This document shows positions 5,179 to 51,908 of a stretch of 64,000 nucleotides of DNA, in pieces (position 1 is the first letter of the stretch; every line of letters starts with the position of its first letter). This stretch comes from Basidiobolus meristosporus CBS 931.73 (Eukaryota; Fungi; Basidiobolomycota), in NCBI GenBank assembly GCA_002104905.1, contig MCFE01000209.1:1-64000 (forward strand), read 5' to 3'. Under the pieces are notes generated by a model. That model was not told where the DNA came from. It did not search any database and worked only from the letters and a program-made list of their open reading frames with translations. Both the position numbers and the translations under genes were made by a program.

Positions 5179-8100
5179 ATGACTGGCATCTGTCAATTCC
5201 CATATTTGTTAACCGGTGATTTCGAGCACAACACTGCCATGGCCGGATTTCTTGTTAGTGAACTCAAGGCAATTGATTTAAGTATCTTACACCAGCATGC
5301 GACTCTGAAAGGGATTAATGGCATTGAAAAATCTCTGGTGTATGCTACATGGATGATTATGCTGAACCTGTACACCGGGAACTCAGACATTACTTTTGGA
5401 GTGAACCTTCCTCATCCTCAGGTATCAATGTTGCTGGGAGATTTACATATTTTCCAGTCAACATATGACCAGGAAATCGCCGAACTCAATGTTAGCTGCT
5501 GGCTGAAGCGCCTAGCACTTATCCAAACCCCATCGTCTCTCAGTTTTGTCGACTTTAATATAGAAACTGCTAGTAACTTTAACACTTGTGTCATCTTCTC
5601 AGATCGACAAGCTCCCATAGATGCCTTCAATTTCAAGGTAATTCATTGCAAATGTGTGAAGCCCCAATTGCTAATACTGACACTTTCCGCTTTAATAAGC
5701 AATTTGCCATCTGTCTAGAAGTATACCAAGCTGAAGATAGCGCCGCTATTCGCATGACCTTTGCAAATAGCCATATTCAGCAAGACCAGGGGATACTGAT
5801 TGTCGACCAGTTTATTCATATTGCTAGAACGTTACTAAACAATCTTGATGCACCCTTGAATACTCTCAATTGGACCCCAGAAAACGAAAAGCACTTACTC
5901 TTGACCGAATGGCAGCAAGGCAAGTCGGATTATGTCCGAGTGCTTGATGATAGCTGCATTCATCATCTGATCGAAGAGCAAGTCAAGAAGACGCCGGACA
6001 ATATTGCACTCCAATTCGAGGACAAAGAACTGGTCACATACTCGGAGCTAAACAAACGAGCCAATAAGCTTGCGCATTCTCTAATCAAGCTTGGTGTGCA
6101 ACTTGACAACGTGGTACCGTTATGCATCGACAAGTCCATCAATATGGTGGTTGCCATACTGGCGGTCCTTAAGGCCGGAGCTGCCTATGTGCCCCTCGAT
6201 CCAGAATACCCAAAGGATCGGATTCGTTTCATCGTACGAGATACAAGTGCAAAAGTTTGTATCACCACAAGCAACTTGCAGAGTACGTTTGCTGAGGGGC
6301 ACAGTCTTCAATTACTAATCGTGGATGAGTTCGATTTTGGTAGTAGTGAAAGATCGGAACTGAACCCCGTCATCCCTGGATTGAAGTCCTCGAATCTTTG
6401 CTACCTAATATTCACCTCGGGCTCCACTGGGAAGCCAAAAGGAGTCATGCTAGAGCATCGTTGCGTCGTTAATTACGTAGCTGCTCACCAGAAGATTCTG
6501 AATTTGACCATGGATGATCGATTCCTCCAGTTCGCCAACTACACCTTTGATGCATCCATACTTGATCTGTTTGTGAATCTGATCACTGGATCCCGTCTAT
6601 GCTTGGCATCCAAGAACAATTTGCTAACAAATCTCTCCGGAATGATGAACCTGATGAATGTTACCGCGGCACAGCTTACTACGACCGTAGCTTCCTTGGT
6701 GGATCCAAATTCTGTACCTACGCTCAAGCTACTTCAGCAAGGTGGTGAAATGCTGACCAGATCCGTTAGAGATGCCTGGGCTAGCAAAGTCAAGTTACAC
6801 AATGGCTACGGGCCGACCGAAACCGCCGTATACACCATTATCAAGGAGTCGGTGCAGCAATCCACCTCATGCGCAAATATTGGGTGGCCCATTGGTCGTA
6901 GTAAGGTTCTCATCCTGAATGACAAGTTGGAGCTGATCCCATTGGGAGCAGTAGGTGAGCTTTGCATTGGTGGGCCACAACTTGCCCGAGGATATCTTAA
7001 TCGACCCGATCTGACGGAAAAAAGCTTTGTCAGCTCTCCGTTTAATCATGGTGAACGTTTGTACAGAACGGGAGATCTGGGAAGATTCAATCCTGATGGC
7101 TCGATCACCATCCTTGGGCGTAAGGATAACCAAGTCAAGTTGAACGGGCTAAGAATAGAAATAGAAGAAATAGAACATGTATTGAATCAATCTCCTGTGG
7201 TTAACCGCGTATCCGTCAGACTGTTGGATCGGAAATCGAAGACATCTAAGGCGAGTAAAGTGCTGGTGGCTTTCGTAACTCTCATCAACAAAATGTCGGA
7301 TGAAGAGTCAGTATCGGTTCTGGAATTGAAAGACTGCCCAGAAGTGAGTCAAATACAAGAGTCAGTTCGGAACCAGCTTCCACCATATATGGTGCCCACA
7401 ATGTGGGTGCCACTGACAAAGATGCCCATCAATACTAGTGGAAAAACTGACTTGAAAACTTTAGAACTCTTGTATACAAGCCTCGAAATTGTCCAAGAAG
7501 TCAAGGAGGCCAAAGACATGCCTACCTCTACTATGGAAAAACTACTGCAGGAGGTTTGGGGAGAGGTGCTGAATGTTGAAAAATCCGCCATTGGCACTGG
7601 TGATTCATTCTATCACTTGGGTGGCGACTCCATTTCCGCTATCCAAATATCCGCCCAATGTCGTCAAAGCGGTGTGGAAGTGTCTGTCCAGAGCATATTA
7701 CAACATCCCACCATCCGTCAGCTGGTAAACTATGCTCAGTTCACAACATTGGCTTTAGAGAAGCAGAGTATAGAGGAGGATGAGAACGATTGGAATGATA
7801 TTCCGTTCACCCCAATTCAGCACCAATTCTTCGGCATGACCCAGCCTGAAGTCAATCACTTCCATTTGTCGTGGTTGGTGAGTGTGAAGCATCCAATCGA
7901 GCTTTCTGCGCTCAGAGGCGCATTATTCGAGCTGATTAACCACCATGATATGCTCAGGACTCGTTTCACCCAAGAACCAGGTCGCTGGAGACAATGGTTG
8001 GCTTCCAACGAACAGACTAATTTCGAGGTGCAGCGTCACCAAGTCACTGGTGTGGAGGAGCTGAAGTCAAGTGTTCTGAAAATACAACGAAGTCTAAACC

Positions 8101-11100
8101 TTGAGACTGGTCCAGTATCATCGTTCGCGATCTATGATCTACCATCCGGTGATCAGCTGTTATTCATGACCATCCATCACTACATCATTGATCTTGTTTC
8201 GTGGCGTATCTTTTGGGAGGATCTAGAGAAGTTACTGAGTGGACAGTCCTTGTCGTACAAAACACTGTCATTCAGAAAGTGGAGTAAGCTGCTTCAAAAG
8301 CATGCTGAGACCTTGACAGTTGAGGATTGGCCGCAACAAGCGCCAATCGAGCCGTTAGATATTGATATGTCCAAGCTTCATCTGAACACAATGGAAACGG
8401 TGGAAACATTATCCTTCACCCTAGATAGTGAGCATACCACTCTACTCTTCGGCAGAAGTAATGATGCTTACGGTACGGAGGCCGTTGACTTCATGCTTTC
8501 CACTCTTGCTACCTCTTATTGTGATGTGTTCCAGACCAATTCCATTACCTTTGCTACGGAAGGCCACGGGCGTGAGCCGTGGGATGACTCCATCGATGTG
8601 TCCAGGACAATTGGCTGGTTCACTTCCATTTATCCAGTCACCATCCAGAGAAAACATGGTGATTCACTGATAGATGTACTGAAGCAGACGAAGGACACTC
8701 GTCGAGCAATTCCTAATCACGGATTGGACTATGGGCTTCTTCGTTATCTAAACTCAGAGATATCCTCTAAATTTAGTAACGATTGTTTCCAGGTTGGCTT
8801 CAACTATTTCGGGCGATTCCAGCATTTGGAGAAGGGTCGCTCTCTGTTTCAACAAGCAGAGGAGCAGTATACATTTGACTTGAATATGATTGGCCCCAAG
8901 TGGAGAAGAATGAATGCAATCGAAGTTGAAGTCACGATTCAACGTGACGATCTGAGTGCCTCGATATCTTACAGCAACAAGCTACATCATGAGAAGCAGA
9001 TCATCCAATGGCTGCAGAGATGGAAGAGGGATTTGATGGAGGTTGTCCAGATTAGTGCCAGCAAGAAGAAGAGAGAACTGACCGTCTCAGATATCCCATT
9101 GCTCCACCTCCATGCCCATCAATTGAACGGATTGTTGGAAGACGTCGAAGCAAAATATGGAGGCGAGTTCTTGCAAAATATAGAAGACATGTATCCCTGT
9201 TCCTCGATGCAGGAGGGCCTGATCGTTGGAAATGCCCGCTCAGCCTCATCGTATCATGTTCAAGATGTATATACTCTGCCCGATGGAGTAGACGAGGATC
9301 GGTTAGTCTCAGCCTGGAGATGCACTGTCAATGACCTACCCATACTGCGAACTGTATTCATAGATAGTTCCATCTCTTCAGTCACCTTAGGAGCATACAT
9401 CCAAGTCGTCCTGCGACATCTCGATGTCGATTTCCAGCATATATGTCCAGGGAATCAAGATGATGATGCTGTACTGAATCAATACCTTGAAGACGATGTA
9501 GCCAAAGGATTTCCACTAGGCCAGCCTAACATACGATTATGCTTGATACGAGGTGAGAAGAATCGGATGGTTATTAGTCGCCATCATGCAATCAATGATG
9601 GTTGGTCCGATAAAATCACTATGGCTTACTTGGAAGCCGTCATCAACAATACTTCAAGACCGCCTGTCATCCCCTACAAAGATTACATTTCTTATTGCAT
9701 GAAGCAGAACGACTCATTTAGCAACGAAGCGGGTGCTGAATACTGGTCAACCTATCTAGCTGGTGCTGATGCCAGCACCTTTCCCAAGCTTGGTAACACA
9801 AATGCCCAAGCTGCGCACCACCAATTTGAATTTAGATCACAAATTCCCATGCGGGTGTTGAAGGACTTTTCAAAGGGGGCCGGTATAACTATGCTCACCT
9901 TAATTCAGGCAGCTTGGGGAATAGTCCTGCAGCCCTATTACGGAAAGGAGGACTTTGTATATGGTGTGCTCACCAATGGCCGCAATATTTCCATGAAGCA
10001 GATCAATCACGTTGTCGGGCCGTGCATTAGCACCACTCCATTAAGAGTTCAATGTCATCCGAGCACCAAAATCATGGATTGGCTACGATCACTGCATCAA
10101 AGCATGGTGGCCCGGATTCCATACGAGCATTGTGGCTTGAGACTGATTAAGCAATGGTGCAAACTGAATAATTCTCCGGTCGACTTCGATGCTATTCTGA
10201 ACTTTCAGTTGTCCGAGAAAGATGATTCAAAGCAAAAGGCGATCTTCGAAATCGAGAGAATAGTCGAGCCGACCGAGTATAGACTTTGTCTTAACGCATG
10301 GACAGAAGGAGATGAGCTTGCTTTTAGATTGGATTTTGACAATGCTACACTGACCAGTCATCTGGCCAATTACCTTTTGGATCGCTTAGAGGCTGTGATT
10401 GGCGGCATTGTCATTGCTGATAGTGGATCTACCATTGCTGATATTCCATATATGTCAAATGCTGAGCGTAACCTGATCCAATCATTCGCAACTGGTTGCA
10501 ATCAAATAGATTCCACTTCAGGATGTCTGCACCACTTATTTGAGAAACAGGTGGTCAAAACACCCAACAACATTGCAATCCGCTATGGGAGTGATCAGAT
10601 TCTTACCTACGATGACTTGAACAAGCAATCCAATCGGTTGGCCCACTACTTGGTTAGTCAAGGGGTTAGACCAGAATCGATGGTGATGCTTTGCCTGGAC
10701 AAATCTATTGAAATGATAGTGGCTATGCTGGCGGTGCTTAAAGCGGGCGGTGCGTACATACCAATAGACCCAACAAGCCCTGTAGAGCGATCCAGGTTTG
10801 TACAGAAGGAAACGGGGGCATCGGTTGTAATTACAGTAAACTTGCACAAGGAGAGATTCGAAGATATCACTCTGGTGTTAATTGACAGCGAAATTAGTGC
10901 ATTCCGCAACTACTCCTCTGAAAATCTGGACAGGGGCGAGGTCGCCGAAAACAATCTATGCTATGTGTTGTACACATCAGGCTCTACCGGGACGCCGAAA
11001 GGGGTGATGTTAGAACATTCAGCTGTGGTCAATTTCATTCATGCCATCAACGAAGTGTGCCAACTCACTTACAGCGATACCTTTCTCCAATTTGCCAACT

Positions 11101-14100
11101 ACACATTTGATGCTTCAGTATTCGAGATATATGCACCACTTGCAGTTGGTGCATCAATAGGGATCACTCGGATGAATCACCTGCTGGCTAATCTAGACGA
11201 ATGGATCAACAAGCTCAAGGTCACCTTTCTGATGCTGACACCAACGATTGCCACAATGATTGATCCGCTTAAAGTACCTTCGGTCAGACGAGTTTTGTTG
11301 GGCGGTGAAATGATGACCACTACGGTTCGAAACATATGGCTACCCCATGTGGAGATACATAATGCCTATGGCCCAACAGAATCGGCTGTTATGATGACGA
11401 TCAATCCTGAAGTACACTCAAATACTTCGTGCTCGAATATCGGAAAAGCAGTTGGCAACAACAGAATATATATTCTTAGTGCCGATCGCCGCCCAGTTCC
11501 GCTTGGAGTTGTTGGAGAGCTTTGTGTTGCTGGACCGCAATTGGCTCGAGGCTATCTCAACAGATCAGATCTAACTGAGAAGGCGTTTGTGACTGGCCTA
11601 TTCGTGTCGGAAGAACGTTTATACAGAAGTGGAGATCTTGCTCGATTCAATGTCGATGGATCCGTGGAGCTTATTGGAAGAATAGACAACCAGGTCAAGA
11701 TCCACGGGTTACGAATCGAATTAGATGAGATAGAGCATGTACTCCACGAACACTCCAGAGTAGCCAGAGCTTGCGTGATTCCCTTGATCACCGATGAGAG
11801 TACCAATCATAAGTCATTGGCCGCTTTCATTACCTTCCATGGCCTAATTGAGAGTAGCCTGCCTATATGCACGCCTGATGGGCCAAAGAGCGAATTGTTC
11901 TCTTCGTATGTCAACGAGGCCAGGTCGCTCGCTCGTAAGAAACTGCCTTCGTATATGGTACCTACCATCTGGATTCCGCTCAATAGAATGCCATTTACGA
12001 CGAGCGAGAAGATTGATCGAAAACATTTGGCATCGTTATATGCCAGCCTAAGTAAAAATGATCTGAAGCTACTGAATCTTGTTGATAATGCCGGCCATGT
12101 TGGAGCTAGGTCGGATTCGGAGGAATCCTGGGCCAAGTTATGGTCATCAGTTCTCAATGTTCCATCTGCTGCTATAGGGGTCCACGATTCGTTCTTCAAC
12201 ATCGGTGGTGATTCAATCTTAGCGGTACGACTAGCAGGTGCTGCTCATAAGGCTGGGTTTGCATTCACAGTGCAGGATCTATACACTTACCCAACCATTG
12301 CTGAGATTGCTGATAATATTGTCACAATCGACTCCGATGCTGTTGAGCCCAAATCAATAGCAAAGTACTCCCTACTGCGCCTGGAACAACATCAGTTTGA
12401 CAAGTTGGTTGAGTGTGATCTCTCACAGCATGGTATTGATATTGAGGAGGTGGAAGATATATATCCCTGCTCGCCAATGCAAGAGGCTCTAATGGCGCTT
12501 AGTTTTAAAGACGACTCCAGCTATTTAACCCAGCAGGTGTATAAATGCGGGCCTGATCTTAACCTTGAAAGGCTTCAGTCTGCTTGGAAGGCAGTAATCG
12601 ATGCAAATCCTATACTCCGGACAGTGATTCTATTCACAAATAGTGGTCTCACCCATTTAAACGGCCTGCAAGTTGTAGTTGGCAGCGGTAATGTTGACTG
12701 GCATGTCAAGGATTTCCAAGATGAAAGGTCGCTTGAAGAGCATCTACCCAAGGTTTTATCAGAGGATCAAGCACGAGGAATATCTGCAGGAAAGCCATTG
12801 ATTCGGTTCAAGGTATTGACCACTATAGGCACAGCAACATACTTCATATGGACTATCCACCATGCGCTCTATGACGGCTGGTCTATGGGTCAAATAGTCA
12901 CTGACGTGATTACTGCTTATGAAGGCCTCGAAGTGGCTTTGCGCCCAACTTACAGTCTGTACATCGATCATCTTCTGAGTCAAGATAAGCAACGGTCTCT
13001 GGACTATTGGTCTGAAACACTTCGCTCGGTGCAAGTTACTCACTTAGCTAGATCAACTGCGCTTCATCAGTCAGTTCAATCACGAGCCAGATATATCGAA
13101 ATTATCGATATTGATTTCGCTAAAGTTACTGGTGTCTATAATATCACAGCAGCCACGATCGCATACCTGGCATGGGCGCTTGTCCTAAAATCGTATACTG
13201 GTAACCCGGATGTGGTGTTTGGAGCAGTGAATTCAGGAAGGAATATTCCCTTACAAGATATACAAGATATCTGTGGGCCTTGTATCACTACCCTTCCAAT
13301 GCGGATCACTCTCTCAGACAACCTGTCACTTTTAGATCTGCTGCTGTCCATACAGAATGCTCAAAATCAACAACATCATTATCAGTCCATCGGTCTACAA
13401 GATATACTTAAACACTGCTGGGACAGTGGTGAAAGCTCATTGTTCGATTCACTATTTGTAGTTCAAAACGTCCGCGATGAAGATACCACTGTAGGCCTCT
13501 CTGCAATTGGACTACATCAATTGGAGGCAACTATGCATATTTCCTACCCTATAGTGATGGAAGTTTGTGCCAACGGAACCTCCCACGAGATCGGCCTCAC
13601 ATACGATACGCAGACAGTGACAGAGTTTGAAGCATCATGGATAGTTAAGCATTTTATTGAAGCGATTAATGTTGTTCTCAAGCAGGTCCACAACATAGTG
13701 AGCGATGTCGATATCGTTACTTCAGAGGAGCTTTGTCTGTTAGAGAGCTGGGATGACACAAAGGACACTGCACAACGATTGTGTTGTGTCCATGAGCTAT
13801 TTGAGAAAAGGGTATTAATTCATCCTGATCAGCAAGCAGTTCAATTCGAGAGCTCTGAAAGTGTCACCTATAATGAGCTGAACATTAGGGCTAACCAGTT
13901 GGCGCACCATTTGATCAAGCTTGGAGTTCGTCCTGACTCGATAGTACCATTGTGCCTGGACAAGTCGATCGTGATGATAGTGGCAATGCTTGCCGTCCTC
14001 AAAGCCGGTGGTGCTTATGTTCCCCTTGACCCGAACAATCCTGTGGAGCGCAGCAGATTCATTATCGAGGAAACAAAGGCCGAGGTGGTGTTGACAACGG

Positions 14101-17100
14101 GTCAGTACAGACAGAAGTTCGACGAGCAATCTCTGGTTCTACTCGACATCGAAGACCTGTCACTTGAGCATTATGATGTCACCAACCCGGAAGTCAGTGA
14201 GCTGAACAACTCCAACCTATGCTATGTGATCTACACCTCCGGCTCTACAGGGAAACCAAAGGGAGTGATGATGGAGCATCGCGGTGCATCAAGCTTTATT
14301 CAAGCATTCAGCCATTCATGGGGCATTGATTCCACCGATACTGCGCTATTTTTCACCAATTACACCTTTGATCCCTCAGTGATTGACATATTCTGTCCAT
14401 TAACAGTTGGCGCGTCCATCGCGATTGCCTCCAAAGACAATCTCCTTACTAACCTGGAGCTATACATAAATACCATGCATGTCACAGCAGCAGTACTCAC
14501 TCCGACTGTTACAAATCTGGTTGATCCTGCAAAGGTACCATCAATGAGGCGGCTCGTGTTGGGTGGCGAAATGATGACCACAGCAGTTCGTGACCTATGG
14601 GTGCCTCATGTGGAGCTTTGCAACGCATATGGTCCAACTGAAGCTGCTGTAGCCATCCTTGCCAACTGGAATGTGACCACAGAAACGGAGTGCACGAACA
14701 TTGGCAAACCAATAGGAGGCAGCAGAATTCTGATCATGGGAGCTGACTTGAAGCCTGTTCCATTGGGTGTGATGGGAGAGCTGTGTGTTGCAGGCCCTCA
14801 GCTTGCCCGTGGCTATCTCAACAGGTACGATCTGACGGAAAAGGTCTTCGTTTCGAGCCCGTTCGTGTACGGTGAGCGCATATACCGAACCGGTGATCTT
14901 GCACGGTTCAACGCGGATGGCTCTGTTGAGCTTGTGGGAAGAATCGACAACCAGATCAAGATCAATGGTTTAAGAATCGAACTGGACGAGATCGAGCACG
15001 CCCTGCATGATCACGCCAAGGTGACAAGAGCATGTGTGATGGCCTTGACCACTGATCAAAAGACCAACCGCAAATCTTTGGTCGCCTTTATGGCTTTCCA
15101 GGGGCTGGAGATGAGCCATACTGCTCCGAGATTTCTGAGTGAACTCGAAGCCGAATTCGCCTACGAGTATATTGAGGAACTAAAGGCTGTCTGCCAGAAG
15201 AGATTGCCTACATACATGGTCCCCAATCTATGGCTTCCACTCAACACTATGCCAGTCAACACAAGCGGGAAAATCGATCGTCGCAAGTTGTCTGATCTCT
15301 TCCTATCCTCAAATCTTGATGAAATCGTGAGATTATCCAAGCACAGAAATGAGAAAAGGAGACAGCTCACCACACCCTTGGAGATGCAGATCCTGGCCGT
15401 ATGGTCGGAGACGCTTAACATTCCTGCCTCCAGCATCGCCGCTGACGACACTTTCTTCCAGCTTGGTGGTGATTCCATTTCTGCCATTCGAGTGTCATCA
15501 CTCAGTCGTCAGAATGGGATCTCACTCTCCGTAAAGCAGATCATGCAAAACCCGACCATCAGTGCACTTGCCTCAGTTGCCACCTTCCAAGATGCTGTTG
15601 ATGCTGAATCAAATGTGTGCGCCGATGGCGATGTCATCCTTACGCCAATCCAGCGACGCTTCCTTGGGGCCCCTCAAGATAATATGCATCATTTCAATCA
15701 GTCCTGGTTGTTGAAGATGCGCGAGTCCACTACAGCGGACAATCTCACCCTAGCGATCCTTGCCCTCGCAAAACATCACGATGTACTTCGCAGTCGATTC
15801 TCGCAGACAGAAGGGGAGTGGAAGATGACAGTGATGCCGATGGATGAGGTTTTGTTCCAGGTCCATCACCATCAGGTGAGGTCTGTTTCGGAGCTGCAAG
15901 GGCACATCCATCAGCTACAACGTGGTCTCAATTTGGCCTCTGGTCCCATGTTCCATTTCTCACTGTACGATCTGGAGGATGGCTCCCAGCTGCTGTTCAT
16001 GACCATCCACCATCTCGTTGTTGATCTGGTGTCATGGCGTATCATATGGGAGGATTTGGAGCAGCTACTTCAAGGAAAGGAGTGCGGCTACAAGTCGATG
16101 ACCTTCATGCACTGGAGTGCCTTACTCAATGAGTATGCTCAAGAGCTGGATATTAGTGCGTGGCCTTCTCAGAAGGTCGCTGAGCCAGTCGTGAGTGATG
16201 CATCTCTCTTAGCCCTGAACACATTCAAGTCCAGCAAATCCGCCACCTTCTCCCTGTCGGTCAACCAAACCGAAAAGCTCTTTGGCAGGTGCAACCTTCC
16301 ATTCCAGACCGAAGCCACTGACCTGATGATCGCTTCGCTGGCCATTGCCTACTGCAAGGTGTTCAACACCAGCAGTATGACCATCGGCATGGAAGGTCAC
16401 GGAAGAGAAGCATGGCGTGATGGGATTGATGTGTCGAGGACTGTTGGCTGGTTCACCACTCTGTATCCATTCGTTGTGGAGATGACTCAAGGCTTCGACC
16501 ATTTGAGTGTCCTCAAACGAGTCAAGGACCAGCGCAAGTCGATGCCAGGGAATGGCATTGTGTATGGATTACTCCGCTATCTGAGTAACAAGCCAAGCAA
16601 CCCGTTCAGTGATGATGTGATCCAGGTTGGGTTCAACTATCTTGGTCGCTTCCAGCAACTGGAGAGCAAGAACTCGTTTTTCCAACCCGCTCAGGCTCCT
16701 TACGATTTTGATATCTCAAGTATTAGCAAAGAGTGGATCAGAGATCATGTCTTTGATATAATAGCCACTATTGACAATGACAGCTTCAGCGCCGGAATCA
16801 CCTACAACCCCCACTTGCACTCGGATGAAATTGTATCCCAGTGGCTTTCCGCCTGGAATGACTGTCTCAATGCTTTGATCGATAGTTGTGCCTCATTGGA
16901 TGCCGTGGAGCATACCCGAAGCGATTTCCCGTTAGTGAAATTCACGGAGGCAGAGTTCAACCTGTTCTACAATCAAAATCTGCCCAATATTGGGGTCGAG
17001 CGTAGTCTCATTGAAGACATCCTTCCATGCACCCCGCTTCAGGAAGGACTGATTGCTGGTATGTTCAAGGATGCCAACTACTATCATGTCCAGCAACAAT

Positions 17101-23100: not shown

Positions 23101-26100
23101 GTATTCATCAGCTGGTTGAGGAGCAGGCGAGAGTCAATCCAGAGCGTACAGCAATTCAATTTGAACTCTCTGAATCGGTCACCTATGCAGAACTCAACAA
23201 CAAAGCTAATCAGTTGGCTCATCATTTGATCAAACTTGGCGTTCGTCCAGAATCGATGGTGCCCCTTTGCCTTGACAAATCAGTTTCAATGGTAGTGGCA
23301 ATGCTTGCTGTCCTCAAAGCTGGTGGTGCTTATGTTCCCCTCGACCCAAACAATCCAGTCGAGCGTAATAGATTCATTCTCGCTGAGACAAACGCACAAG
23401 TTGTAGTAACCTTGGATGCGCACAAATCCACCTTCGAAACAAAGGCTTTGGTACTACTAGACTCAGACCGGGATTGTATTCGCCAATATCCTGAGGATAA
23501 TCCAGAAGTCAGTGACTTGAATAGCTCAAACCTGTGTTATGTTCTATTTACCTCTGGCTCAACTGGAGCACCTAAAGGAGTGATGCTAGAGCATTCCGCC
23601 GTGGTTAGCTTTGTTGGCGCAATCCAGCAAGAGTATGACTTTACCCCCCAAGACTCAATACTTCAGTTCGCCAATTACACCTTCGACGCTTCAGTATTCG
23701 AGATATATGTTCCCCTTGCCATCGGAGCTTCTGTATCCATGGCGCGAAAGGACTACTTACTCACCGATCTTGAGGAATGCATCAGACAGCTTAAAGCAAC
23801 ATTCTTGATGCTGACACCCACCATTGCTACCCTAATTGACCCACTCAAGGTACCGTCAGTGAAGAACCTGATGTTCATAGGGGAGATGTTGACAACCACC
23901 GCATTGAACAAGTGGTCGCCATATGTTGATCTGAGCAACGGCTATGGACCGACTGAATCGGCAGTCCTGATGACTGTCAATACGCAAATGGACTTGACTA
24001 CTTCGTGCTCGAATGTCGGGATGCCGATCGGAAACAATAGGCTCTATATCCTGGGCGATGACAACTATCCGGTTCCGTTTGGTATAGTCGGCGAGCTGTG
24101 TGTTGCTGGGGGACAGCTAGCTCGGGGATATCTAAACAGGCCTGATCTGACAGATAATGTATTCGTTGAAAGTCCATTTGTGTCAGCAGAACGCCTCTAC
24201 AGAACTGGAGATCTTGCTCGATTCAATAGCGATGGATCCGTGGAGCTTATTGGAAGAAAAGATAACCAGATCAAGATACATGGGTTGAGAATCGAGCTGG
24301 ATGAGATTGAGCATGCTCTCCACGAGCACCCCAAAGTCGCTAGAGCGTGTATAGTTCCTTTGGTTACCGACAAAGCCACTGATCACAAATCATTAGTTGC
24401 TTTTGTGACTTTTAACGATATTACTGACGACAACACATCTTGTGGTTTGATAGAGAGAACCTACAATGAAGAGGCTGTTGATTACATCAAGGAGATTAAG
24501 ACGCTTCTTCGAAAGAAGCTGCCTACTTATATGATGCCCAACATATGGGTTCCTGTCAATAGAATGCCGACGACAACGAGTCAGAAGACTGACAGGAAGA
24601 AGCTAGCCTCGTTGTATTCCTCCCTGGACAAAGAGGATTTGATGAAGTGGAATCACAACGATACTTCTGGTCGCGTTAGAACTAGAACCGCAATGGAGGA
24701 AACCTGGATTGAACTCTGGTCAGCGGTTCTCAAAATTTCGTCGGACACTATTGGAGTACATGACTCTTTCTTTAGTCTTGGAGGTGACTCTATCCTAGCC
24801 ATCAGGCTAGTTGGTGCTGCTCATAAGGCTGGATTCACACTGACAGTCCAGGATCTCTATATATATCCTACGATCGCTGAGCTTGCAATCAGTTGTCCCT
24901 TAAACTCTAAAATTACGGAAACAAAGCTGGTTGAGAAATACTCCCTGCTCAAATTGGATCTTGAACAACTGGAGTATTTGGTCGAACACGAACTGCCCCA
25001 GCATAACATTAATCCTGATGAAGTAGATGACATCTACCCCTGTTCTCCGATGCAAGAGGCACTCGTGGCTCTGAGCATACAAGACGAATCAAGCTACGTC
25101 AGTCAGCTTGTATACAACTGTGAATCCACTGTTGACTTGGAGAGACTTCGAACTGCCTGGAAGTCAGTTATTGATGTAAACCCCATTCTTAGAACTGTCA
25201 TACTGTTTACAACCAGTGGCTTTGCTCATTTGAATGGCCTTCAGGTTGTTCTTCATGGCGAAAATATACAGTGGAGCATTAAGGAATATGAAGATGCCAC
25301 ATTGCTTGAAGACGGCCTGACCCGAACCTTGGAGGATGATAGGTCACGAGGGATTTCGGTGGGTCAACCACTGACTCGGTTCACATTGCTGAAGGCAAGA
25401 GGTACTACATCATACCTCATATGGACTATTCACCATGCACTGTACGATGGTTGGTCCATGAATCATATAGTATCGGACGTTGTCACTGCTTATCAAGGGC
25501 ATAATTTGACCGCTAGGCCACCATACAATCTTTACATCAACTACCTGATGGATATGGACAGGAGTCAATCTATCAAATACTGGAAAGAGAAGTTGAATTC
25601 GGCAACTTCAACACATTTGACTGGTAATTCCCGAATTGTTGAGGAGACGCTAATGTCATCTACGATCATTGAGAGCATCCAGGCAGACTTCAGTTCACTT
25701 GCTAGTGAGTATAGCCTAACAATAGCTACCGTTGCATATTTAGCCTGGGCCATGGTGCTAAAGTCTCATACTGGTAACTCGGACGTAGTATTTGGAGTAG
25801 TGGACTCAGGAAGAGGTATTCCTCTCCACAACGTTCAAGACATTTGCGGTCCCTGTATCACGACATTGCCCACACGTATCACTCTCTCAGATACCCAATC
25901 CCTTTTGGACGCTCTGCGGTTAATTCAGAATGCACAGATCCAGCAACGCCAGTATCAATCTATCGGGCTACAAGATATTCTCAAACATTGTTGTGACATT
26001 GGAGAAAGTTCGCTATTCGACACCCTATTAGTGGTTCAAAATATCAACCGGGAGGGGGATGCTAGGGGGTTCTCTACCATTGGTCTGGAGCAGTCTGTCG

Positions 26101-29100
26101 CCTCCATGCCTATAGACTATCCAATTGTGATGGAGATGAGTTCAGAAGGCACGGATCACACGATTGTTCTGACGTATGACGCACATACCGTAACTGAGTT
26201 CGAGGCATCCTGGATTGTGAAGCACTTCGTGGAGGCACTCAACGTGATTCTCTCCAATAACCACGCCGCTGTCGAAGATATGAAGATTACAACGGCAGCC
26301 GAATTAGAACTGATAGAAAGTTGGAGTACCAATGGTGACACTCTATTCCGCTCTGGGTGCATCCATGAGTTGATTGAGCAGCGAGCATTGCTTCACCCAG
26401 AGCAGGTTGCAATTCAGCTCGAGGACACCGAATATGTTACTTATGGCGACCTTAATAGTAGAGCCAATCAGCTAGCTCACCATTTGATCAAACTCGGTGT
26501 CCGTCCTGACTCGATAGTACCACTTTGTCTTGAAAAATCAGTTGCTATGGTGGTGGCAATGCTTGCAGTTCTTAAAGCCGGTGGAGCCTATGTTCCACTT
26601 GATCCCAACAATCCTGCGAAGCGAAATGGATTCATTCTAAAGGAGACAAACGCAAAAGTTGTTTTGACACTAGAAACATACAAACATAACTTTGGTGATC
26701 GAGCCCTTGTACTGCTAGATTCCGATGATTTATCTCTGGAGCAGAGCAACCCCAACAACCCTCAAGTGATTGGCCTGGAGAGCTCTAGTCTATGCTATGT
26801 GATCTATACTTCGGGTTCAACAGGCATGCCCAAGGGAGTAATGATGGAACACCGAGGTGCTTTGAATTTCATTGAAGGATTCCAGAACGTATGGGGCATT
26901 GGCGTATCGGATTCTGTCTTGCAATTTGCCAATTACACCTTTGATGCATCCGTGATTGAGATATTCTGCACATTGGCTGCGGGTGCCTGTGTTGCAATTG
27001 CATCGAGCGAGAATCTTCTGTCTAATATTGAGTGGTGCATCAACACCATGAATGTAACCTCGCTGATGCTTACCCCAACTGTGGCTACCTTAATTGACCC
27101 AACCAAAGTGCCTTCCGTGAAGCGACTAGCGTTGGGCGGTGAGATGATGACAACGGCAGTCCGCGACTTATGGGCACCTTATGCCAAGCTGTATAATGCT
27201 TATGGGCCCACTGAGGCTGCGGTGGCTATTCTAGCCAACTGCAACATTACCGAGGACACACTTTGTAGCAATATCGGCAAACCAATTGGAAGCTGCAAGA
27301 TCGTGATCTTGGGTGCTGATCTACAGCCTGTGCCACTGGGCGTGGCTGGCGAACTGTGTGTTTCTGGACCTCAGCTCGCTCGTGGTTATCTCAACCAACC
27401 TGAGCTTACCGGAAAAGCATTCGTGACTAGTTGCTATGTACCCGGAACCCGGGTCTATCGCACTGGAGATCTGGCGCTTTTCAACGAGGATGGGACAGTC
27501 AAGATTGTTGGTAGAATGGACAATCAGATCAAGATCAACGGCTTGAGAATCGAACTGGATGAGATCGAGCATGCCCTTCACGATCACTCGAAAGTGGCAA
27601 GAGCATGCGTTCTGGCATTAACCACTGATCCAAACGCCAACCGTAAGTCGCTAGTGGCATTCTTGACATTTTACGATATGGAGGGCGCAACTTCCACCCC
27701 GGAGTTGCTGAAGGGCTCACAAGCTGCATCGGCCACTGTGTATGTAGAGGAACTAAAATCGGCTGTGGGTCAGCGGTTATCGTCATATATGGTTCCAAAT
27801 ATCTGGATATCGCTGAACACCATTCCAATCAACACCAGTGGAAAAGTAGATCGTCGCAAACTAGCTGATTTCTACGCATCTTTCAGTAGCGATGACATCT
27901 CCCAGATAATCAGGGGAGGCAAGGAGTGTGGCAATGAGGTGGACACTCTATCGAACGGTAGTACTGGAGAAAAGTGGAATGATTTGGACGATGCATTGCA
28001 ACCTCAAAATTCAATGCAACTCTTTATACAGGAAGTCTGGTCCAAGGTGCTGAAAATCCCCAAAAATAGTATCGGTATCAACCACACTTTCCGCTCTCTG
28101 GGTGGGGATTCCATTCTGGCCATCCATGTTTCCTCCGAATGCCGTAAACACAACATACAGATTTCAGTACACAGTATGCTTAAAAACCACACCATCATCC
28201 AGCTTGCCGAGAGTGCCAAAATGAAAGCATGCGATCTAACAGTGAAGAACTCATTGAGTCAGGGTGAGGTTCATCTTTCTGCCAATCAACATATGTTCTT
28301 GGAATTCGAGCAGGAGAACTTCAACCACTTCAATCAGAGCTGGCTATTCAGGTTGCGGAACCCGACAAACAAGGCAAACCTTCAACTGGCAGTTCAATAC
28401 CTGATACTCAATCATGATATTCTTCGTGGTCGATTCACCCGCACTAAGAACGAATGGAAACTACGAGTACTGTCGCCAAAGGAGATGTCATTCGAAGTCC
28501 ACCATATGCAGGTCCAATCGAAAGAAGAGCTGAAGGCCTCCATCTACCTTCTTCAGCGTGGCCTGGACTTAATATCCGGACCTTTGTTCCAATTCGCCCT
28601 ATATGATCTACCGGACGGCCAACAGCTGATCTTCATGGCCGTCCATCACTTTATCATTGATCTTATGTCATGGGGCCCTGTCTGGGAAGAGCTTGAACTT
28701 CTGCTTCGAGGTGAAACTCCTGTTGGCCAGTCGATATCGTACATGCACTGGAACAAAGTACTCTACGATTATGCCCAGACTTTGGAAATGAGTTCATGGC
28801 CTAAGCAACCCCAAACGCCACCTATTATCACCGATCCCGAACTGCTGTCTAAAAACACCTTTGAATCCACAAGTTCAGTCTCTTTCAGACTAAATTCCTA
28901 CTTCACGAAATTAGCCGATAGCTACTGCGGAACATCTACAAAGGTAGAAGTGATCGATCTGCTAGTGGCTTCCCTGGCATATTCCTATTGCTGTACCTTT
29001 GAGAGAGACTCTCTTTCTGTTACCCTAGAAACCCATGGACGCCAGTACAGGGATGAGGATGTGGACATCTCGAGGACTGTAGGATGGTTCACCAATTTGT

Positions 29101-30341
29101 ATCCAATTGTCATTCAATTGGGTGAAACCCAACGTATGGAAGACGCCATTCGTCAAGCCATCCGACAACACCATGAAATCCGTGGAAACGAGGTAAACTA
29201 CGGTCTTTTGAGGTATATGAACAAAAAAACCGCTCCATTCTTCGAAAAGGAGCCACCCCAAGTCGCCTTGGGATATATGCCAAATACTGCGACCCATGGC
29301 AACTCTAGCTCCTGCTTGCTTCCCATTCCATCCGATTCCGAATATAGTTTCGATCTGGGTGGTATTCCTTCCACTTGGAAACGTCATCAAGTCTTTAATT
29401 GTACCGCTCATTATGTGGGAGACCAGCTTGAGGCCAGTATCACCTACAGCGAAGCACTCCACTCCAAGTTTGAGGTGCAGTCCTGGATCGGTCTATGGGA
29501 AACTGAATTGATAGATGCTATCAAGGCCGTTTCGCAAGAAATAACTTCGCCATATGAACATCCCCAGCAGTACATTTTGCCATCTGAAAGTGGAATTCCT
29601 TCTCCTCCCCCGGAAGATAAATCTTTTCGAGAGGACATCAAGGGAAATGAGGATGATTGCTTGACATTGATCTCGAAGAGCAGTGGCCCGACAATGTTTA
29701 TTGTACACTGTGCCACTGGTGTGGGCAGCTATTTTGAGCTTCTGGGACAATATATGAATTGCACCCTATATTCCATCAGTGACCCCACTCTTGGAACCAA
29801 TGAATCATTTGATTCTGTTGAGATGATTGCTGCCAGATATCTGAAGGCGATTATTCGGGTGCAACCAGAAGGGCCCTACTACCTGCACGGATACTCCTTT
29901 GGCGGCTTGGTCGCCTTCGAGATTGTGCGTCAGCTTGAGTGGCAGGGGAAAGAGATCGCGAGATTGACCATTATTGACACGCTGGCACCGCAAGCTGGGC
30001 GGCAGGTATGGGCATCCCCTACTCAGGATTCTGCCCGCGACTACTTGGCGATGATCTCTGCTTCAGGTGAATGGGCATTGGACGAAGCAGCCTCCCAAAT
30101 GATGTTGGAGAAAATAGTGGAGAACACCCAACTGATGAGAAATTACGAACCTTCGGTCAAGCTGGCCACGGATATCGTGTTGGTGAAAGGGCTGGGTGCC
30201 AAGGATAGATTGGGCGAGCAGCAATTATGCTACGGCTGGTCGGAATACTCGAACAACGTGGTGGTTCACAGTGTAAAGGCTGAGCATCACGAGCTAATGT
30301 TTGAACCGCACGTGGCCACGATTGCCCAGTATCTCCAATAG
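5179..30341 (+). CDS. Six-module nonribosomal peptide synthetase, ~8,318 aa, C*-A-T-E / C-A-T / C-A-T-E / C-A-T-E / C-A-T / C-A-T-E-TE
   Basis: Exons 5179-5637, 5700-18113, 18180-22775 and 22854-30341 join in frame across three GT-AG introns (24,957 nt). Six A domains (TSGSTGxPKG, FDxS, YGPTE, Y(R/K)(T/S)GD, A10 Lys), six T domains (GGDS), four E domains (HHxxxDLxSW, E(G/T)HGR, RT(I/V)GWFT), five full C domains (HHAxxDG/DA) and a terminal thioesterase (GYSFGG, Asp in IIDT, His in EHH). Approximate spans: A1 5955-7470, E1 7795-9100, A2 10520-12030, A3 13785-15290, E3 15630-16900, A4 18425-19930, E4 20270-21540, A5 23100-24600, A6 26360-27870, E6 28265-29540, TE 29680-30338. The exact 5' start is uncertain. 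Confidence 0.95.
5638..5699 (+). other. NRPS intron 1 (62 nt, phase 0)
   Basis: AAG|GTAATT donor, GCTAAT/ACTGAC branch candidates and AAG| acceptor. Joins ORF 5179 (FNFK) to the main ORF frame (QFAICLEVY). Confidence 0.8.
13844..17114 (+). repeat. Intragenic direct repeat, copy 1 (A3-T3-E3 plus start of C4)
   Basis: 3,271 bp, near-identical to 18482-21752 at a constant 4,638-bp offset. About 20 scattered substitutions seen by eye, plus one 30-bp divergent island. Confidence 0.97.
18114..18179 (+). other. NRPS intron 2 (66 nt, phase 0)
   Basis: GAG|GTAAAT donor, CACTAAC branch point and TGTAG| acceptor. Restores KEATE|YPLTLNVY in C domain 4. Confidence 0.93.
18482..21752 (+). repeat. Intragenic direct repeat, copy 2 (A4-T4-E4 plus start of C5)
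   Basis: Partner of 13844-17114. Identity starts at ATTCGAGAGCTCTGAA and ends at GAGATTACTGGT. Confidence 0.97.
22776..22853 (+). other. NRPS intron 3 (78 nt, phase 0)
   Basis: GAG|GTTGGT donor, AACTAAC branch point and TTTACAG| acceptor. Restores NERTE|YSLVLNIG in C domain 5. Confidence 0.93.
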
Positions 30342-32342
30342 GAGTTGTCCACTCGTATATTTCCCGATACTTTCATGTTATCTCAATCGGCATAAATAAA
30401 AGGAATTCTTAACAATAGATCATGAAAAACCCCCATTCGCTTTCACTAGTGGTGCCTGTTCCGGAGTCACCACATAATTGGACTCGGCGACATTGATGCT
30501 ACCTGGCCAAGATGGTCAGTATTGCGTTCTCGATGAGTTTCGGTGAGTTACAATACTGGAATAGGGGTCAAGACCACGGTTTTCTTTCACCCTAGCAAGT
30601 GTATTAGCTGCTGAGCCTCTAGTACTTACACCCCACTACCAATGCTCTATGTCACAGCGTGGTAATTGCAGCCAGTTTAGAAGCGATTGGTGAAGTATCC
30701 CTGAATTGTGTACCATAATGACAACTATAGCATTTTTAGAAAATTCCTGCTTATCGCATTAAATTTAACACCTGATGTTTTCATGAATCTGGCTAATGAG
30801 CATGTTGGTCTTACCTGTACAACTTGATCGGCCATTTCATCCCCACGTGATTAACTCTGTGCAATCAAATTATATCCAATCACCCGACAATGGTGATAAG
30901 CAGCAATTCAATGGAACCATTCAAGTATGATAGGTCTCTGGTTTGCTAATTGGAAGAATATTGAGCGTGGATTTGGAGATAGAATATGTGCTCTTTACCA
31001 ACTCAATAAACCAACGAGAATCATATAAATCTTCTAGTTCACCAAATTATTTCCAATCCAAAGAATAGGGTCCTGCTGTCGATGAGACCAAGTTCAGCCA
31101 GAGTTTCGTATCACAGGGCCGATGTCCACAGTACATTGAACAGCAACGTCTCCCGCATCAACCTTTCTGACAATTCAATGTCATGCGACTGCATGGTAAA
31201 GCCCAAGGGTGACATCCGCTCCTGTGAAACGTGGTGAAGGAGAACCATGGTGGTTGAAAGCGGGAAGCACGCAATCGAATAGTGATGACGGCAAGATTAT
31301 CGGATTGAGAAAAGGGCATCAACCGGCTTTGGTTCAGCACTTTTCAGAAGATGCGAAAGGGATTTATCGCGGACAGCCCATGCGGCAGCCATTTCATGAA
31401 GAAAGCCACCTGATTGTAGGTATTGGGCACATTCGATGGCTGATATGGTGCTACATACGATCATGAAGGAGCAAAGTTGTCTTTTTGTTGGCGCATAATG
31501 AGGGTGCACTCCTCTATCTTGATACTCGCCCTAGCAATCACTCTGGTCTGTTCATTTTCATGCAGCGATCACTCACATGCATGTAACGATCGCTCTAACG
31601 ATGCTTTGCCACAAGTAGGTATTAGTAGTCAACTCCTAAGAGTAGGAGCAATGCATCGCGTACACATGCGATTTGATACCGATTCATTAATAAGATGGTT
31701 ACATCAAAATCTTATTCGTGAGACTGCACTAAATGCCGTAGAATAACTTAAAGGGCACTGGGTTAGCTGTGGCATAGACTAAAGGGTACTATGTATTAAA
31801 ATGAATCGGCTTTAGCTCAATGCTAGTGATATGCATCTTATCAAATAAGTTTGTACAATGGAGAGACCTAATAAGGAACAAGAGTAAAAGCCGAGTGAAG
31901 GATATGGCAGATACTGAATAAGTACTAGAGGATGCTGAAAATAAAAACAAGTGCATCAGATATTTACGTGCTCACCACACTGGCCAAGAGGAGTGGTATC
32001 AAGTTTTCCCGTTACCCCAAATCGATACCTTACACTTGGCCTGAAGCCTAGAACCACCCTAGTGGATATGCGTCATGTGGATTCGCAACGCATCACTGCC
32101 GTCTCGCATGTATATTCATTGATGATGCACACATCAGTGAGGTAAGGGATCGACACAGCTGTGAAGATCCGAAAACTACTTGCTTGTAGACACTGAACAC
32201 AACAAGACATAAATGTCAGCCAAATCCCCATCATGTCTGTATATTCTCCCAATTGTGCAGTAGCAACTCCACCAACTGACCTTCTAGTCGGTCGGCCTTC
32301 TTGAATTTTTCCAATTGTCAATCCACCACGAAACTGCCAAGG

Positions 32343-34151
32343 ATGGCCGAAACTACTGCTCCCACAATCTCAGTCAAGGGCAACGCTTCTGAAACCAATG
32401 TAGAACCCCCGGCAACCCCTTGGTACCAGAGGTTAAGCCACACAAGAGGTCTACTCCTCTTCCTGATCTGTTTGGCGCCGATGTTGGATATTATCAATGT
32501 TGCCTCCGTCACTATAGCTCTTCCCTCCATTCTTCGTGATGTCCATTACGAATCGAATCAATTGCAATGGTAGTGCGATGCAAAGAATTCATCATAGCGC
32601 TTGTATTTCTGACTCATTGGCTGTGTAGGGTTGTAAGCAGTTATGCATTGACATATTCTGCCTTTCTCTTAGTCGGTGGACGCATGGTAAGTCCTTGCAT
32701 AATGAGCAAGGAGTATACCTTATTCTGACTGCTATCATCGCATAGGGGGACCTATTTGGCCATCGTCGAATTTTTCTGATCGGCACGGGTTGGTTCTCAG
32801 CATGGTCCTTGGTATGCGGGTTCGCACGCAACCCCATCTTCATGTCTGTGGCAAGGGGCTTACAAGGCGCCGGGGCCGGTCTTACACTGTAAGTTTTGGT
32901 GATCTGGTACTTAAGCTATAGATGACTAACCACCAATATTGTTTGATCAGCCCCTCTTCATTAGCCCTCCTAACCACCTCGTATCCTCCTGGCCCCGAGC
33001 GCACACTAGCCCTCTCCATCTTTGGCGGGGCAAGCTGCATCGGACAGACAGTTGGAGTTCTCCTGGGAGGCATCTTTGACGCGACTATCGGGTGGTACTG
33101 GACCTTTTTCGCTACAGCCATCATCTCAACGGTCCTCTGCATTGCCGGCATCGTTGTGATCCCCAAAGTGAGCAACAGCCCCTCAGTGGTAGACCGCCGT
33201 GTCGACTACCTTGGTGTTGGTCTCTTCACGTTAGGCATCATCGCCATCATCTACTATCTCTCCGAGTCTATAACAGCAGGTTGGGGCTCGGTCAAGGTGC
33301 TGATCCCCTTCCTGGTTGGCCTTGCGTTCTTGATCGGATTTGTCTTTTGGGAAAGGCGTATTGAGTACCCGGTCATGCCTTTCCGTATTTGGCGCTCCCG
33401 CCGCTTCTTTTCCAGCGTTGTTGTCATGTTCTGCGTCTCGGCTGCGTACAACATCACGATCTTTTACACGTCTTTAACCTTTCAGAATGTGCTTCTCTAC
33501 TCGCCTTTGATCACTGCATGCTGTTACATCGTTCATGGCGTTGGACTGGTCATTGGGCTCTACACGCTTACCAGGCTGTTCTTGTTCATGAGGTCCAAGT
33601 TGATCACCTTGATCGGATGGTGCTTTATCATCACTTCATCCATCGTGTTTGCGCTTATCGTCCCTGGTTCGACCTATTGGCAATACGCATTCCCTGCTCT
33701 GATTGTCAACTGTATCGGACTTGCGCTTACTTGGATGTGTTGTCAAGTCAACGCAGTTGCTGACGCCAACGATGAGGACCAGGGTGTCGTAGGTGCTGTC
33801 TTTAATGTTTCAGTCCAGGTCGGGGGGCCTGTTGGGCTGTCCGTAGGAACGATAATATCCCATGTGTATGAAGGTGTTGGCAGTACGCCCGAGGCTCTAA
33901 TGAGCGGCTACAGGGCAGCATTATACACCATTGGTGTTTTTGGTGGGGTTGGCTTCTTGCTGACGGTGGTCTTGGCTTCAAACAACGACCCCAACGAATT
34001 CTCCGGCCTACCCCCCAAGATAGACGAGGATGTGGAGAAGAACGAGCCTGTCACCAACAGTAGCAACCTTTCCGTCTTGGGTGGTGAGCAGGCTGAGGTT
34101 GGCGAGGAGAAATTCATCAAGGCGCAGGAGATTGAAGCAAGGACTCATTGA
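32343..34151 (+). CDS. MFS drug:H+ antiporter, DHA2/EmrB-QacA-like, ~542 aa
   Basis: Exons 32343-32569, 32629-32686, 32746-32888 and 32951-34151 splice in frame (1,629 nt). Motifs include LDIINVASVTIALPSI, QWVVSSYALTYSAFLLVGGRMGDLFGHRR (motif A), RGLQGAGAG and DYLGVGL, with many hydrophobic segments. Lies 2 kb downstream of the NRPS on the same strand. Confidence 0.93.
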
Positions 34152-51869: not shown

Positions 51870-51908
51870 GATGAGATGAGATGAGATGGGATGGGATGGG
51901 ATGGGATG
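51870..51908 (+). repeat. (ATGAG)3(ATGGG)4 compound microsatellite
   Basis: Perfect pentamer array ~120-160 bp 3' of the monocarboxylate transporter stop. Confidence 0.95.

What the first reader, a model, noticed from the sequence alone, without database searches (positions are those of the whole stretch)
5179..34151. Apparently intact six-module, D-amino-acid-rich NRPS with an adjacent exporter in a probable early-diverging fungus
Seen: one spliced ~8,318-aa reading frame with 6 A, 6 T, 4 E, 5 full C domains and a TE, with catalytic motifs present. A DHA2 MFS gene follows 2 kb downstream. Established: E domains invert the T-bound residue, so colinearity gives D-L-D-D-L-D. Pocket residues read by eye against GrsA PheA numbering are A1 DALQQGGVYK, A2 DAFMLGAVMK, A3=A4 DPIVVGAVAK, A5 DAFMMIGVLK and A6 DAIMAGAVAK. 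Inference: a polar residue, then Leu-like, two identical hydrophobic residues, a small residue (Ile301 narrows the pocket) and a large hydrophobic/aromatic residue. No intact tailoring genes are nearby, so the product is probably an unmodified hexapeptide exported by the MFS. I cannot match this architecture to a characterised synthetase; novelty is untested.
Basis: partly seen in the sequence, partly recalled or inferred. Interest (0 to 1): 0.88.

Follow-up and report, generated by a model that had tools for sequence, protein, structure and literature searches.

The report
Orphan six-module fungal peptide synthetase
This is an intact gene for a six-step peptide-assembly enzyme in the fungus Basidiobolus meristosporus, likely making an unknown six-residue peptide with four mirror-image amino acids; the gene is already annotated and belongs to a known enzyme class.

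Summary
A four-exon gene (5179-30341, +) encodes 8,318 aa with one terminal stop. Its layout is a C-lobe leader, then A-T-E-C-A-T-C-A-T-E-C-A-T-E-C-A-T-C-A-T-E-TE.

The window is Basidiobolus meristosporus CBS 931.73, GenBank MCFE01000209.1, so "early-diverging fungus" is right. GenBank already annotates an 8,305-aa product here and a 542-aa MFS at 32343-34151. The strain's NRPS genes were surveyed in 2020 (PMC7466969), but none has been tied to a product.

In my trees the A and C domains sit in a Basidiobolus-only clade inside a fungal clade. Bacteria and the Mortierella alpina NRPS sampled fall on the other side.

- C2, C4 and C5 group with C domains that follow E domains. C3 and C6 group with those that do not. 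This supports D-L-D-D-L-D.
- All three introns lie at one homologous C-domain site, which also carries introns in B. ranarum relatives.
- Related enzymes share the leader, the first-module pocket code and the T-E-TE ending.
- No relative outside the genus exceeds 38% identity.

Untested: transcription, substrates, cyclic versus linear release, and the MFS's role as exporter. The scan also noted a T-E-TE ending elsewhere in this genome.

Verdict: a new member of a known kind, of moderate interest.

The parts
5179..30341 (+). NRPS gene, four exons (5179-5637, 5700-18113, 18180-22775, 22854-30341), 8,318 aa. GenBank lists an 8,305-aa product ending at 30341.
5179..5957 (+). N-terminal leader of about 240 aa: the C-terminal lobe of a C domain without HHxxxD. 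Relatives keep it at 27-36% identity.
   Evidence: hhalign 93.9%, E 1.5e-7, C-profile columns 201-396
5638..5699 (+). Intron 1, 62 nt, phase 0. B. ranarum P0320 and the paralog P0157 have an intron at the same site.
5958..9074 (+). Module 1: A1 (5958-7430, code DALQQGGVYK), T1 (7527-7751), E1 (7743-9074)
9162..12335 (+). Module 2: C2 (9162-10481, 'after-E' clade), A2 (10527-11996, DAFMLGAVMK), T2 (12111-12335)
12435..16907 (+). Module 3: C3 (12435-13745, 'after A-T' clade), A3 (13788-15257, DPIVVGAVAK), T3 (15372-15596), E3 (15588-16907)
16995..21545 (+). Module 4: C4 (16995-18383, spans intron 2, 'after-E' clade, HHAILDA), A4 (18426-19895, DPIVVGAVAK), T4 (20010-20234), E4 (20226-21545)
18114..18179 (+). 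Intron 2, 66 nt, phase 0, at '...ATE|YPL' in C4
13835..17243 (+). Copy 1 of a 3,409-bp direct repeat (A-T-E plus the start of the next C). It is 97.45% identical to 18473-21881, and the core 13865-16664 differs at about 19 positions.
   Evidence: read depth about 2x and a bridging contig
18473..21881 (+). Copy 2 of the repeat
21633..24911 (+). Module 5: C5 (21633-23054, spans intron 3, 'after-E' clade), A5 (23103-24572, DAFMMIGVLK), T5 (24687-24911)
22776..22853 (+). Intron 3, 78 nt, phase 0, at '...RTE|YSL' in C5. A second donor at 22737 would remove 13 aa and give GenBank's 8,305 aa.
25008..29546 (+). Module 6: C6 (25008-26318, 'after A-T' clade), A6 (26361-27830, DAIMAGAVAK), T6 (28008-28232), E6 (28224-29546; HHFIID kept, ETHGRQ in place of EGHGRE)
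29640..30338 (+). Thioesterase domain: GYSFG Ser, an Asp 27 residues later, and AEHH His. All are conserved in B. ranarum P0121.
32343..34151 (+). MFS transporter gene, four exons (32343-32569, 32629-32686, 32746-32888, 32951-34151), 542 aa, DHA2-like

Best explanation
This is an intact, colinear, six-module non-ribosomal peptide synthetase gene of Basidiobolus meristosporus CBS 931.73. It belongs to a Basidiobolus-expanded lineage of fungal NRPSs. Members of that lineage share a non-catalytic C-lobe leader, an A-T-E first module with a near-invariant pocket code, and a T-E-TE ending.

Inferred mechanism:
1. Each A domain loads one amino acid onto its T domain.
2. E1, E3, E4 and E6 epimerise the tethered residue.
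3. C2, C4 and C5 accept D-configured donors. C3 and C6 accept L-configured donors.
4. The chain grows as D-X1, L-X2, D-X3, D-X3, L-X5, D-X6. Residues 3 and 4 are the same amino acid, because module 4 is a recent copy of module 3's A-T-E.
5. The TE releases the hexapeptide, more likely as a head-to-tail ring than as a linear acid.

Shown here: the gene structure, domain order, catalytic motifs, pocket codes, C-domain clades, the duplication, intron conservation and the organism. Inferred: activity, stereochemistry, substrates and the mode of release. The neighbouring DHA2-like MFS is only a candidate exporter.
For: - The 25-kb reading frame has one stop, and all core motifs are present.
- E1 and E3 pass the TIGR01720 cut-off. 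E4 is 97% identical to E3.
- E6 keeps HHxxxD and the Glu/His-Gly-Arg motif, and its variant form is conserved in B. ranarum.
- The TE triad is intact and conserved.
- C-domain tree: a 98* clade holds 15 'after-E' C domains among 19 and includes C2, C4 and C5. A 95* clade holds C3 and C6 and none of the after-E C domains.
- A-domain tree: all six A domains fall in a Basidiobolus clade inside a 100* fungal clade.
- Intron sites are conserved across species and paralogs.
- B. ranarum P0389 has the same leader, first-module code and T-E-TE ending with four modules.
- Short-read contigs support both repeat copies.
- Base composition matches the neighbouring housekeeping gene.
- The species is known to make cyclic D/L peptides (PMC10964425, PMC10478498).
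Against: - No RNA run was listed, so transcription and splicing are untested.
- E6 scores below the family cut-off.
- E4 carries a replaced patch of about ten codons that removes a Trp conserved in 15 of 17 Basidiobolus E domains.
- C4 and C5 read HHxxxDA rather than HHxxxDG.
- Only pentapeptides are reported from the species. No hexapeptide is known.
- The intron 3 donor is ambiguous by 13 aa.
- Substrates cannot be assigned from the codes with these tools.
Confidence: 0.72

Rival explanations
1. The gene is a bacterial-type NRPS acquired by horizontal transfer, of the kind described for Mortierella alpina and proposed for many Basidiobolus NRPS genes.
For: - PDB hits for module 1 are led by bacterial LgrA and TycA (E 1e-218 and 1e-170). 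Fungal SidN scores only 1e-53.
- PMC7466969 flags 22 of this strain's 30 NRPS and NRPS-like genes as transfer candidates.
Against: - In the A and C trees the domains sit in a fungal clade with Sorochytrium, Ramaria, Pleosporales and Tieghemiomyces. Bacteria and the Mortierella NRPS lie across a 95-99* branch.
- Epimerisation uses separate E domains. In the C tree the Mortierella C domains group with bacterial ones, apart from this gene's.
- Three introns sit at sites conserved across species and paralogs.
- GC content is like the neighbours'.
- The PDB result reflects how few fungal NRPS structures have been solved.
Confidence: 0.08
2. It is a siderophore synthetase. PMC7466969 placed 44 A domains of this strain in a fungal siderophore clade.
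For: - PMC7466969 reports expanded siderophore-type A domains and siderophore activity in this strain.
- Some 14-span MFS transporters carry siderophores.
Against: - The architecture has four E domains and a TE. It has none of the tandem T-C repeats that, from my own knowledge, characterise hydroxamate synthetases.
- Five of the six pocket codes are lined mainly with hydrophobic residues.
- The transporter's best matches are DHA2 efflux pumps.
- I could not establish which clade the paper assigned to this gene.
Confidence: 0.05
3. It is a silent or decaying gene, or it does not work colinearly. For example, one of the near-identical modules 3 and 4 could be skipped, giving one of the known cyclic pentapeptides.
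For: - No expression data were available.
- E4 has a replaced patch and E6 is divergent.
- Only pentapeptides are known from the species (PMC10964425).
Against: - There is no stop or frameshift in 25 kb.
- The catalytic motifs are intact.
- The E6 variant motif is conserved in B. ranarum, which argues for selection.
- Module skipping is rare (my own knowledge).
Confidence: 0.15

Closest known systems
Uncharacterised Basidiobolus NRPS paralogs and relatives: B. ranarum KAK9729412.1 (P0121), P0320, P0172, P0277 and P0389; B. meristosporus ORX94727.1 (P0157)
   Same: - They share the roughly 240-aa C-lobe leader with its intron.
- They share an A-T-E first module with pocket code DALQQGGVY.
- P0121 and P0389 share the T-E-TE ending.
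- Identity is 53-59% over colinear stretches that tile most of the protein.
   Different: - Module numbers differ. P0389 has four.
- Pocket codes of the internal modules differ, so the products probably differ.
- None has a known product.
Pes1/NPS4-type ascomycete NRPSs (for example 'nonribosomal peptide synthase Pes1' of Usnea florida, P0421)
   Same: - They are multimodular fungal NRPSs starting with A-T-E and alternating E-containing and plain modules.
- They are the nearest named Dikarya hits to A1-T1-E1.
   Different: - Identity is only 33-34%.
- They end in a C domain, not E-TE.
ACV synthetase and NocB of nocardicin synthesis (architecture from my own knowledge)
   Same: - They end in A-T-E-TE.
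- The NocB thioesterase is the best solved-structure match of this TE (6ojc, E 9.5e-16).
   Different: - Their module numbers and substrates differ.
- The sequence similarity is weak.
- Neither has a leader or an E domain in the first module.
Mortierella alpina NRPSs MalA, MpcA and MpbA (PMC9365243; bioRxiv 10.1101/2020.08.21.262279)
   Same: They are NRPSs of an early-diverging fungus and make D-rich short peptides.
   Different: - The one M. alpina NRPS sampled (P0302, not confirmed to be one of these three) has A and C domains that nest among bacterial ones. This gene's domains do not.
- From my own knowledge, those enzymes epimerise with dual E/C domains rather than separate E domains.

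Membership tests
Modular type-A NRPS | A domains with core motifs A3, A5, A8 and the A10 Lys | tested here: met
   Six AMP-binding domains, and every motif is found in all six.
Modular type-A NRPS | Carrier domains with the phosphopantetheine-binding Ser (GGxS) | tested here: met
   Six GGDSI motifs and six PP-binding hits.
Modular type-A NRPS | C domains with HHxxxD(G) | tested here: met
   Five full C domains. C4 and C5 read HHAILDA.
Modular type-A NRPS | E domains with HHxxxD, EGHGRE and the TIGR01720 region | tested here: met
   E1 scores 109 bits and E3 97 bits against a cut-off of 74.2. E4 is 97% identical to E3. E6 scores only 31.7 bits but keeps the catalytic His and Glu.
Modular type-A NRPS | Releasing thioesterase with a Ser-Asp-His triad | tested here: met
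   Pfam Thioesterase at E 1.5e-23. GYSFG, an Asp 27 residues later and the His are all conserved in B. ranarum.
Mortierella-type bacterial-like NRPS | A and C domains nest within bacterial clades | tested here: not met
   Query domains lie in the fungal clade. Mortierella P0302 lies with Pseudomonas and other bacteria.
Mortierella-type bacterial-like NRPS | Epimerisation by dual E/C domains | tested here: not met
   Separate E domains are each followed by a C domain or the TE.
Fungal hydroxamate siderophore synthetase | Tandem T-C units at the C-terminus, with no E domains and no TE | tested here: not met
   The domain order has four E domains and a terminal TE.
Fungal hydroxamate siderophore synthetase | A domains specific for acyl-hydroxyornithine | not testable with these tools
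   No reference code set or predictor was available. Five of the six codes are lined mainly with hydrophobic residues.
DHA2 (14-span drug:H+ antiporter) MFS | Match to the DHA2 family profile | tested here: inconclusive
   TIGR00711 is the best hit at E 6.9e-28, but 97.6 bits falls below the 230.2 cut-off. Only the last exon (399 of 542 aa) was scored. The next hits are all DHA2 pumps.
DHA2 (14-span drug:H+ antiporter) MFS | Fourteen membrane spans | tested here: inconclusive
   A crude hydropathy scan gave 12 peaks, two of them overlapping. No proper topology predictor was run.
Biosynthetic gene cluster with a dedicated exporter | Transporter linked to the synthetase in related loci, or co-expressed with it | tested here: not met
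   Downstream of the B. ranarum T-E-TE locus lie Band_7 and BAG genes and a sugar-type MFS 7.7 kb away. Co-expression could not be tested.

The most novel reading that the evidence does not exclude
This gene and its Basidiobolus relatives form an old, intron-bearing fungal lineage of E-rich, TE-releasing NRPSs rather than bacterial imports. On this reading the lineage grew by duplicating whole modules, and a shared intron marks one C-domain type and the leader. This six-module member would make an undescribed cyclic hexapeptide, D-L-D-D-L-D, beginning with the residue that its relatives' shared first-module code implies.
Probability: 0.4. Interest if true: 0.55.

Novelty: new member of a known kind. 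Interest (0 to 1): 0.4.

Why it matters
Few natural products are known from Zoopagomycota. Those from Basidiobolus are cyclic pentapeptides, and none has been genetically tied to a gene. This gene is a clean, complete candidate for a further D/L peptide.

The family traits found here give direct handles for linking genes to products: the shared first-module code, the T-E-TE ending and the intron marker.

The trees and conserved introns also temper the published view that Basidiobolus NRPS diversity came mainly from bacteria. That holds at least for this lineage.

The nearly identical A-T-E tract in modules 3 and 4 is a natural example of a module-exchange unit.

Tried and rejected
- RNA evidence: two calls to the run finder failed as busy. 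The RNA search then listed no run, so splicing and expression stay untested.
- The full exon 4 homology search timed out. I repeated it on a region.
- Annotated full-length protein: the homology tool's length window and the 5,000-residue limit of the contig look-up kept me from retrieving it or looking up P0389. I therefore could not find the JGI gene-model number or its values in PMC7466969. That paper's supplements are not held.
- The protein atlas search on the XMAP215 gene gave no usable taxonomy. An exact look-up of that ORF found nothing because the annotated gene has further exons.
- The homeologous contig ends 1.1 kb past XMAP215. Whether a second NRPS copy exists is unknown.
- I rejected the 'bacterial-like' impression from PDB hits once the trees were built.
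- The E4 patch is not a compensated frameshift. Shifted alignments do not restore identity.
- NCBIfam could not separate the two C-domain types, because all C domains hit the same profile region. The tree labelled by upstream domain did separate them.
- No substrate assignment was attempted beyond the codes. No predictor or reference set was available.
Full report
**Observation.** Four long ORFs on the + strand are separated by short GT..AG gaps. Joining 5179-5637, 5700-18113, 18180-22775 and 22854-30341 gives 24,957 nt and 8,318 aa with a single terminal stop. The introns are 62, 66 and 78 nt and all are phase 0.

- Motif scans find six A3, A5 and A8 motifs, six GGDSI carrier motifs, nine HHxxxD motifs and GYSFG in the TE.
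- Profiles built from the gene's own domains give the order A-T-E-C-A-T-C-A-T-E-C-A-T-E-C-A-T-C-A-T-E-TE after a leader of about 240 aa.

**Organism and annotation.** The XMAP215/TOG gene at 44206-51023 (-) is 100% identical to a protein of Basidiobolus meristosporus CBS 931.73. The contig look-up shows that the window is GenBank MCFE01000209.1, bases 1-64000.

- GenBank lists an 8,305-aa product ending at 30341 and a 542-aa MFS_1 product at 32343-34151.
- The 13-aa difference from my model equals a second phase-0 donor at 22737, 39 nt upstream of mine. That is an inference.
- B. ranarum gene models end the homologous exon at '...E|YPLG', which favours my donor.
- PMC7466969 surveyed this strain's 30 NRPS and NRPS-like genes. 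It names no six-A-domain model in its text, and its supplements are not held.

**Leader.** The first 240 aa align to the C-terminal lobe of a C domain and lack the HHxxxD half. The profile-profile comparison gives 93.9% probability, E 1.5e-7, against C-profile columns 201-396. Relatives keep the leader at 27-36% identity, well below the 60-70% of the first A-T-E module. It is probably structural rather than catalytic.

**Epimerisation and stereochemistry.**
- E1 and E3 pass the TIGR01720 cut-off, and E4 is 97% identical to E3.
- E6 scores below the cut-off and reads ETHGRQ instead of EGHGRE. It keeps HHFIID, and the same variant (ESHGRQ) occurs in B. ranarum P0121, which suggests a conserved terminal subtype.
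- I labelled 105 C domains by their upstream domain and built a tree. C2, C4 and C5 fall in a 98* clade in which 15 of 19 members follow an E domain. C3 and C6 fall in a 95* clade of 27 that holds none of the after-E C domains.
- The C-domain types therefore match the E-domain positions, which supports D-L-D-D-L-D. This remains an inference.

**Release.** The TE has the Ser, an Asp 27 residues later and the His, all conserved in B. ranarum. Its best solved relative is the NocB thioesterase. Whether it cyclises or hydrolyses was not testable. All peptides known from the species are cyclic pentapeptides containing D and L residues (PMC10964425, PMC10478498, PMC11376311).

**Affinities.** PDB hits looked bacterial, but that reflects which structures have been solved.
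- In a tree of 108 A domains, all six fall in a Basidiobolus-only clade of 26 (support 91). That clade sits inside a 100* clade with Sorochytrium, Ramaria and Pleosporales, and Tieghemiomyces lies next to it. The 45 bacterial A domains and those of a Mortierella alpina NRPS lie across a 95* branch.
- The C-domain tree agrees.
- Outside the genus the best identities are 38% (Chytriomyces), 35% (Sorochytrium) and 33-34% (Pes1-type ascomycete NRPSs).
- No characterised synthetase is close.
- Caveats: the trees are unrooted quick searches, and the sampling came from top hits.

**Family.** B. ranarum fragments tile the protein colinearly at 53-59% identity: P0320, P0172, P0277 and P0121.
- The complete B. 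ranarum P0389 (5,180 aa) has a leader, then A-T-E-C-A-T-C-A-T-C-A-T-E-TE.
- The first-module code DALQQGGVY is identical in six of the seven family proteins read. The seventh differs at one position.
- Internal codes differ between species, so the products likely differ.

**Introns.** All three introns lie at one homologous site, about 60 residues before the end of the C fold: in the leader, in C4 and in C5.
- B. ranarum P0320 and the paralog P0157 have a phase-0 intron at the leader site.
- B. ranarum P0277 and P0172 have phase-0 introns at the same site in their after-E C domains, and none in the other C type.
- This is comparative support for the splice sites. It also argues for long residence of the gene in the fungal genome.

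**Duplication.** Bases 13835-17243 and 18473-21881 are 97.45% identical over 3,409 bp. The core differs at about 19 positions in 2,800 bp.
- Contigs from two DNA runs show about twice the depth inside the repeat (180-260 against 104-118). One 1,448-bp contig bridges 17085-18532 without a difference. Both copies are therefore real.
- The runs may come from the assembly's own sample.
- More distant similarity (A2 to A5 60%, C3 to C6 59%, C4 to C5 54%) points to an older duplication of a two-module unit.

**Surroundings.** The MFS gene has four exons and 542 aa. Its best profile is DHA2, though under the cut-off because only the last exon was scored.
- The related B. ranarum T-E-TE locus has no such neighbour, so the exporter role rests on proximity alone.
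- The other neighbours are copia-type fragments, a WD40 gene, two small genes without Pfam hits, the XMAP215 gene and another MFS.
- No tailoring genes are present.

**Verdict.** The gene is a new member of a known kind. It is already annotated and belongs to a surveyed gene set, and its product is unknown.

Noticed in passing
window 16713-16742 vs 21351-21380: Inside the otherwise almost identical E3 and E4 coding tracts, about ten codons are wholly replaced (ISSISKEWIR against PSEVCVDRCR) with length preserved. E4 thereby loses a Trp kept in 15 of 17 Basidiobolus E domains. It is not a compensated frameshift.
   Followed up: partly
window 5638-5699, 18114-18179, 22776-22853; L005 3906-3969; L006 10478-10542; L007 1496-1592 and 6156-6237; L008 6592-6687: Phase-0 introns sit at one homologous C-domain site in the leader and in one C-domain subtype, across two species and several paralogs. 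They could serve as a marker of module duplication history.
   Followed up: yes
window 22737 vs 22776: Two in-frame donors lie 39 nt apart for intron 3. GenBank's 8,305-aa product fits the upstream donor. Homology with C4 and with the B. ranarum models fits the downstream one.
   Followed up: partly
window 104-2274 and 58031-61631 (+): Ty1/copia-type retroelement fragments (SH3_retrovirus, RVT_2, rve, gag_pre-integrs), broken into several ORFs, lie near both ends of the window. They have lower GC and a strong A excess.
   Followed up: no
window 44206-53377 (-); L003: The XMAP215/TOG gene and the adjacent 446-aa MFS gene recur in the same order on contig MCFE01000020.1. XMAP215 is 92% identical there, which suggests a duplicated genome region. 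That contig ends before any NRPS position.
   Followed up: partly
P0123 (Tieghemiomyces parasiticus, 7,870 aa): A five-module NRPS in which every module is A-T-E and the protein ends in an E domain. That would predict an all-D pentapeptide.
   Followed up: no
first A domains of P0320, P0389, P0187, P0155, P0157, P0274 and this gene: The first-module pocket code DALQQGGVY is identical in six of the seven family proteins read. P0274 differs at one position. This implies one shared, D-configured first residue across the family.
   Followed up: partly
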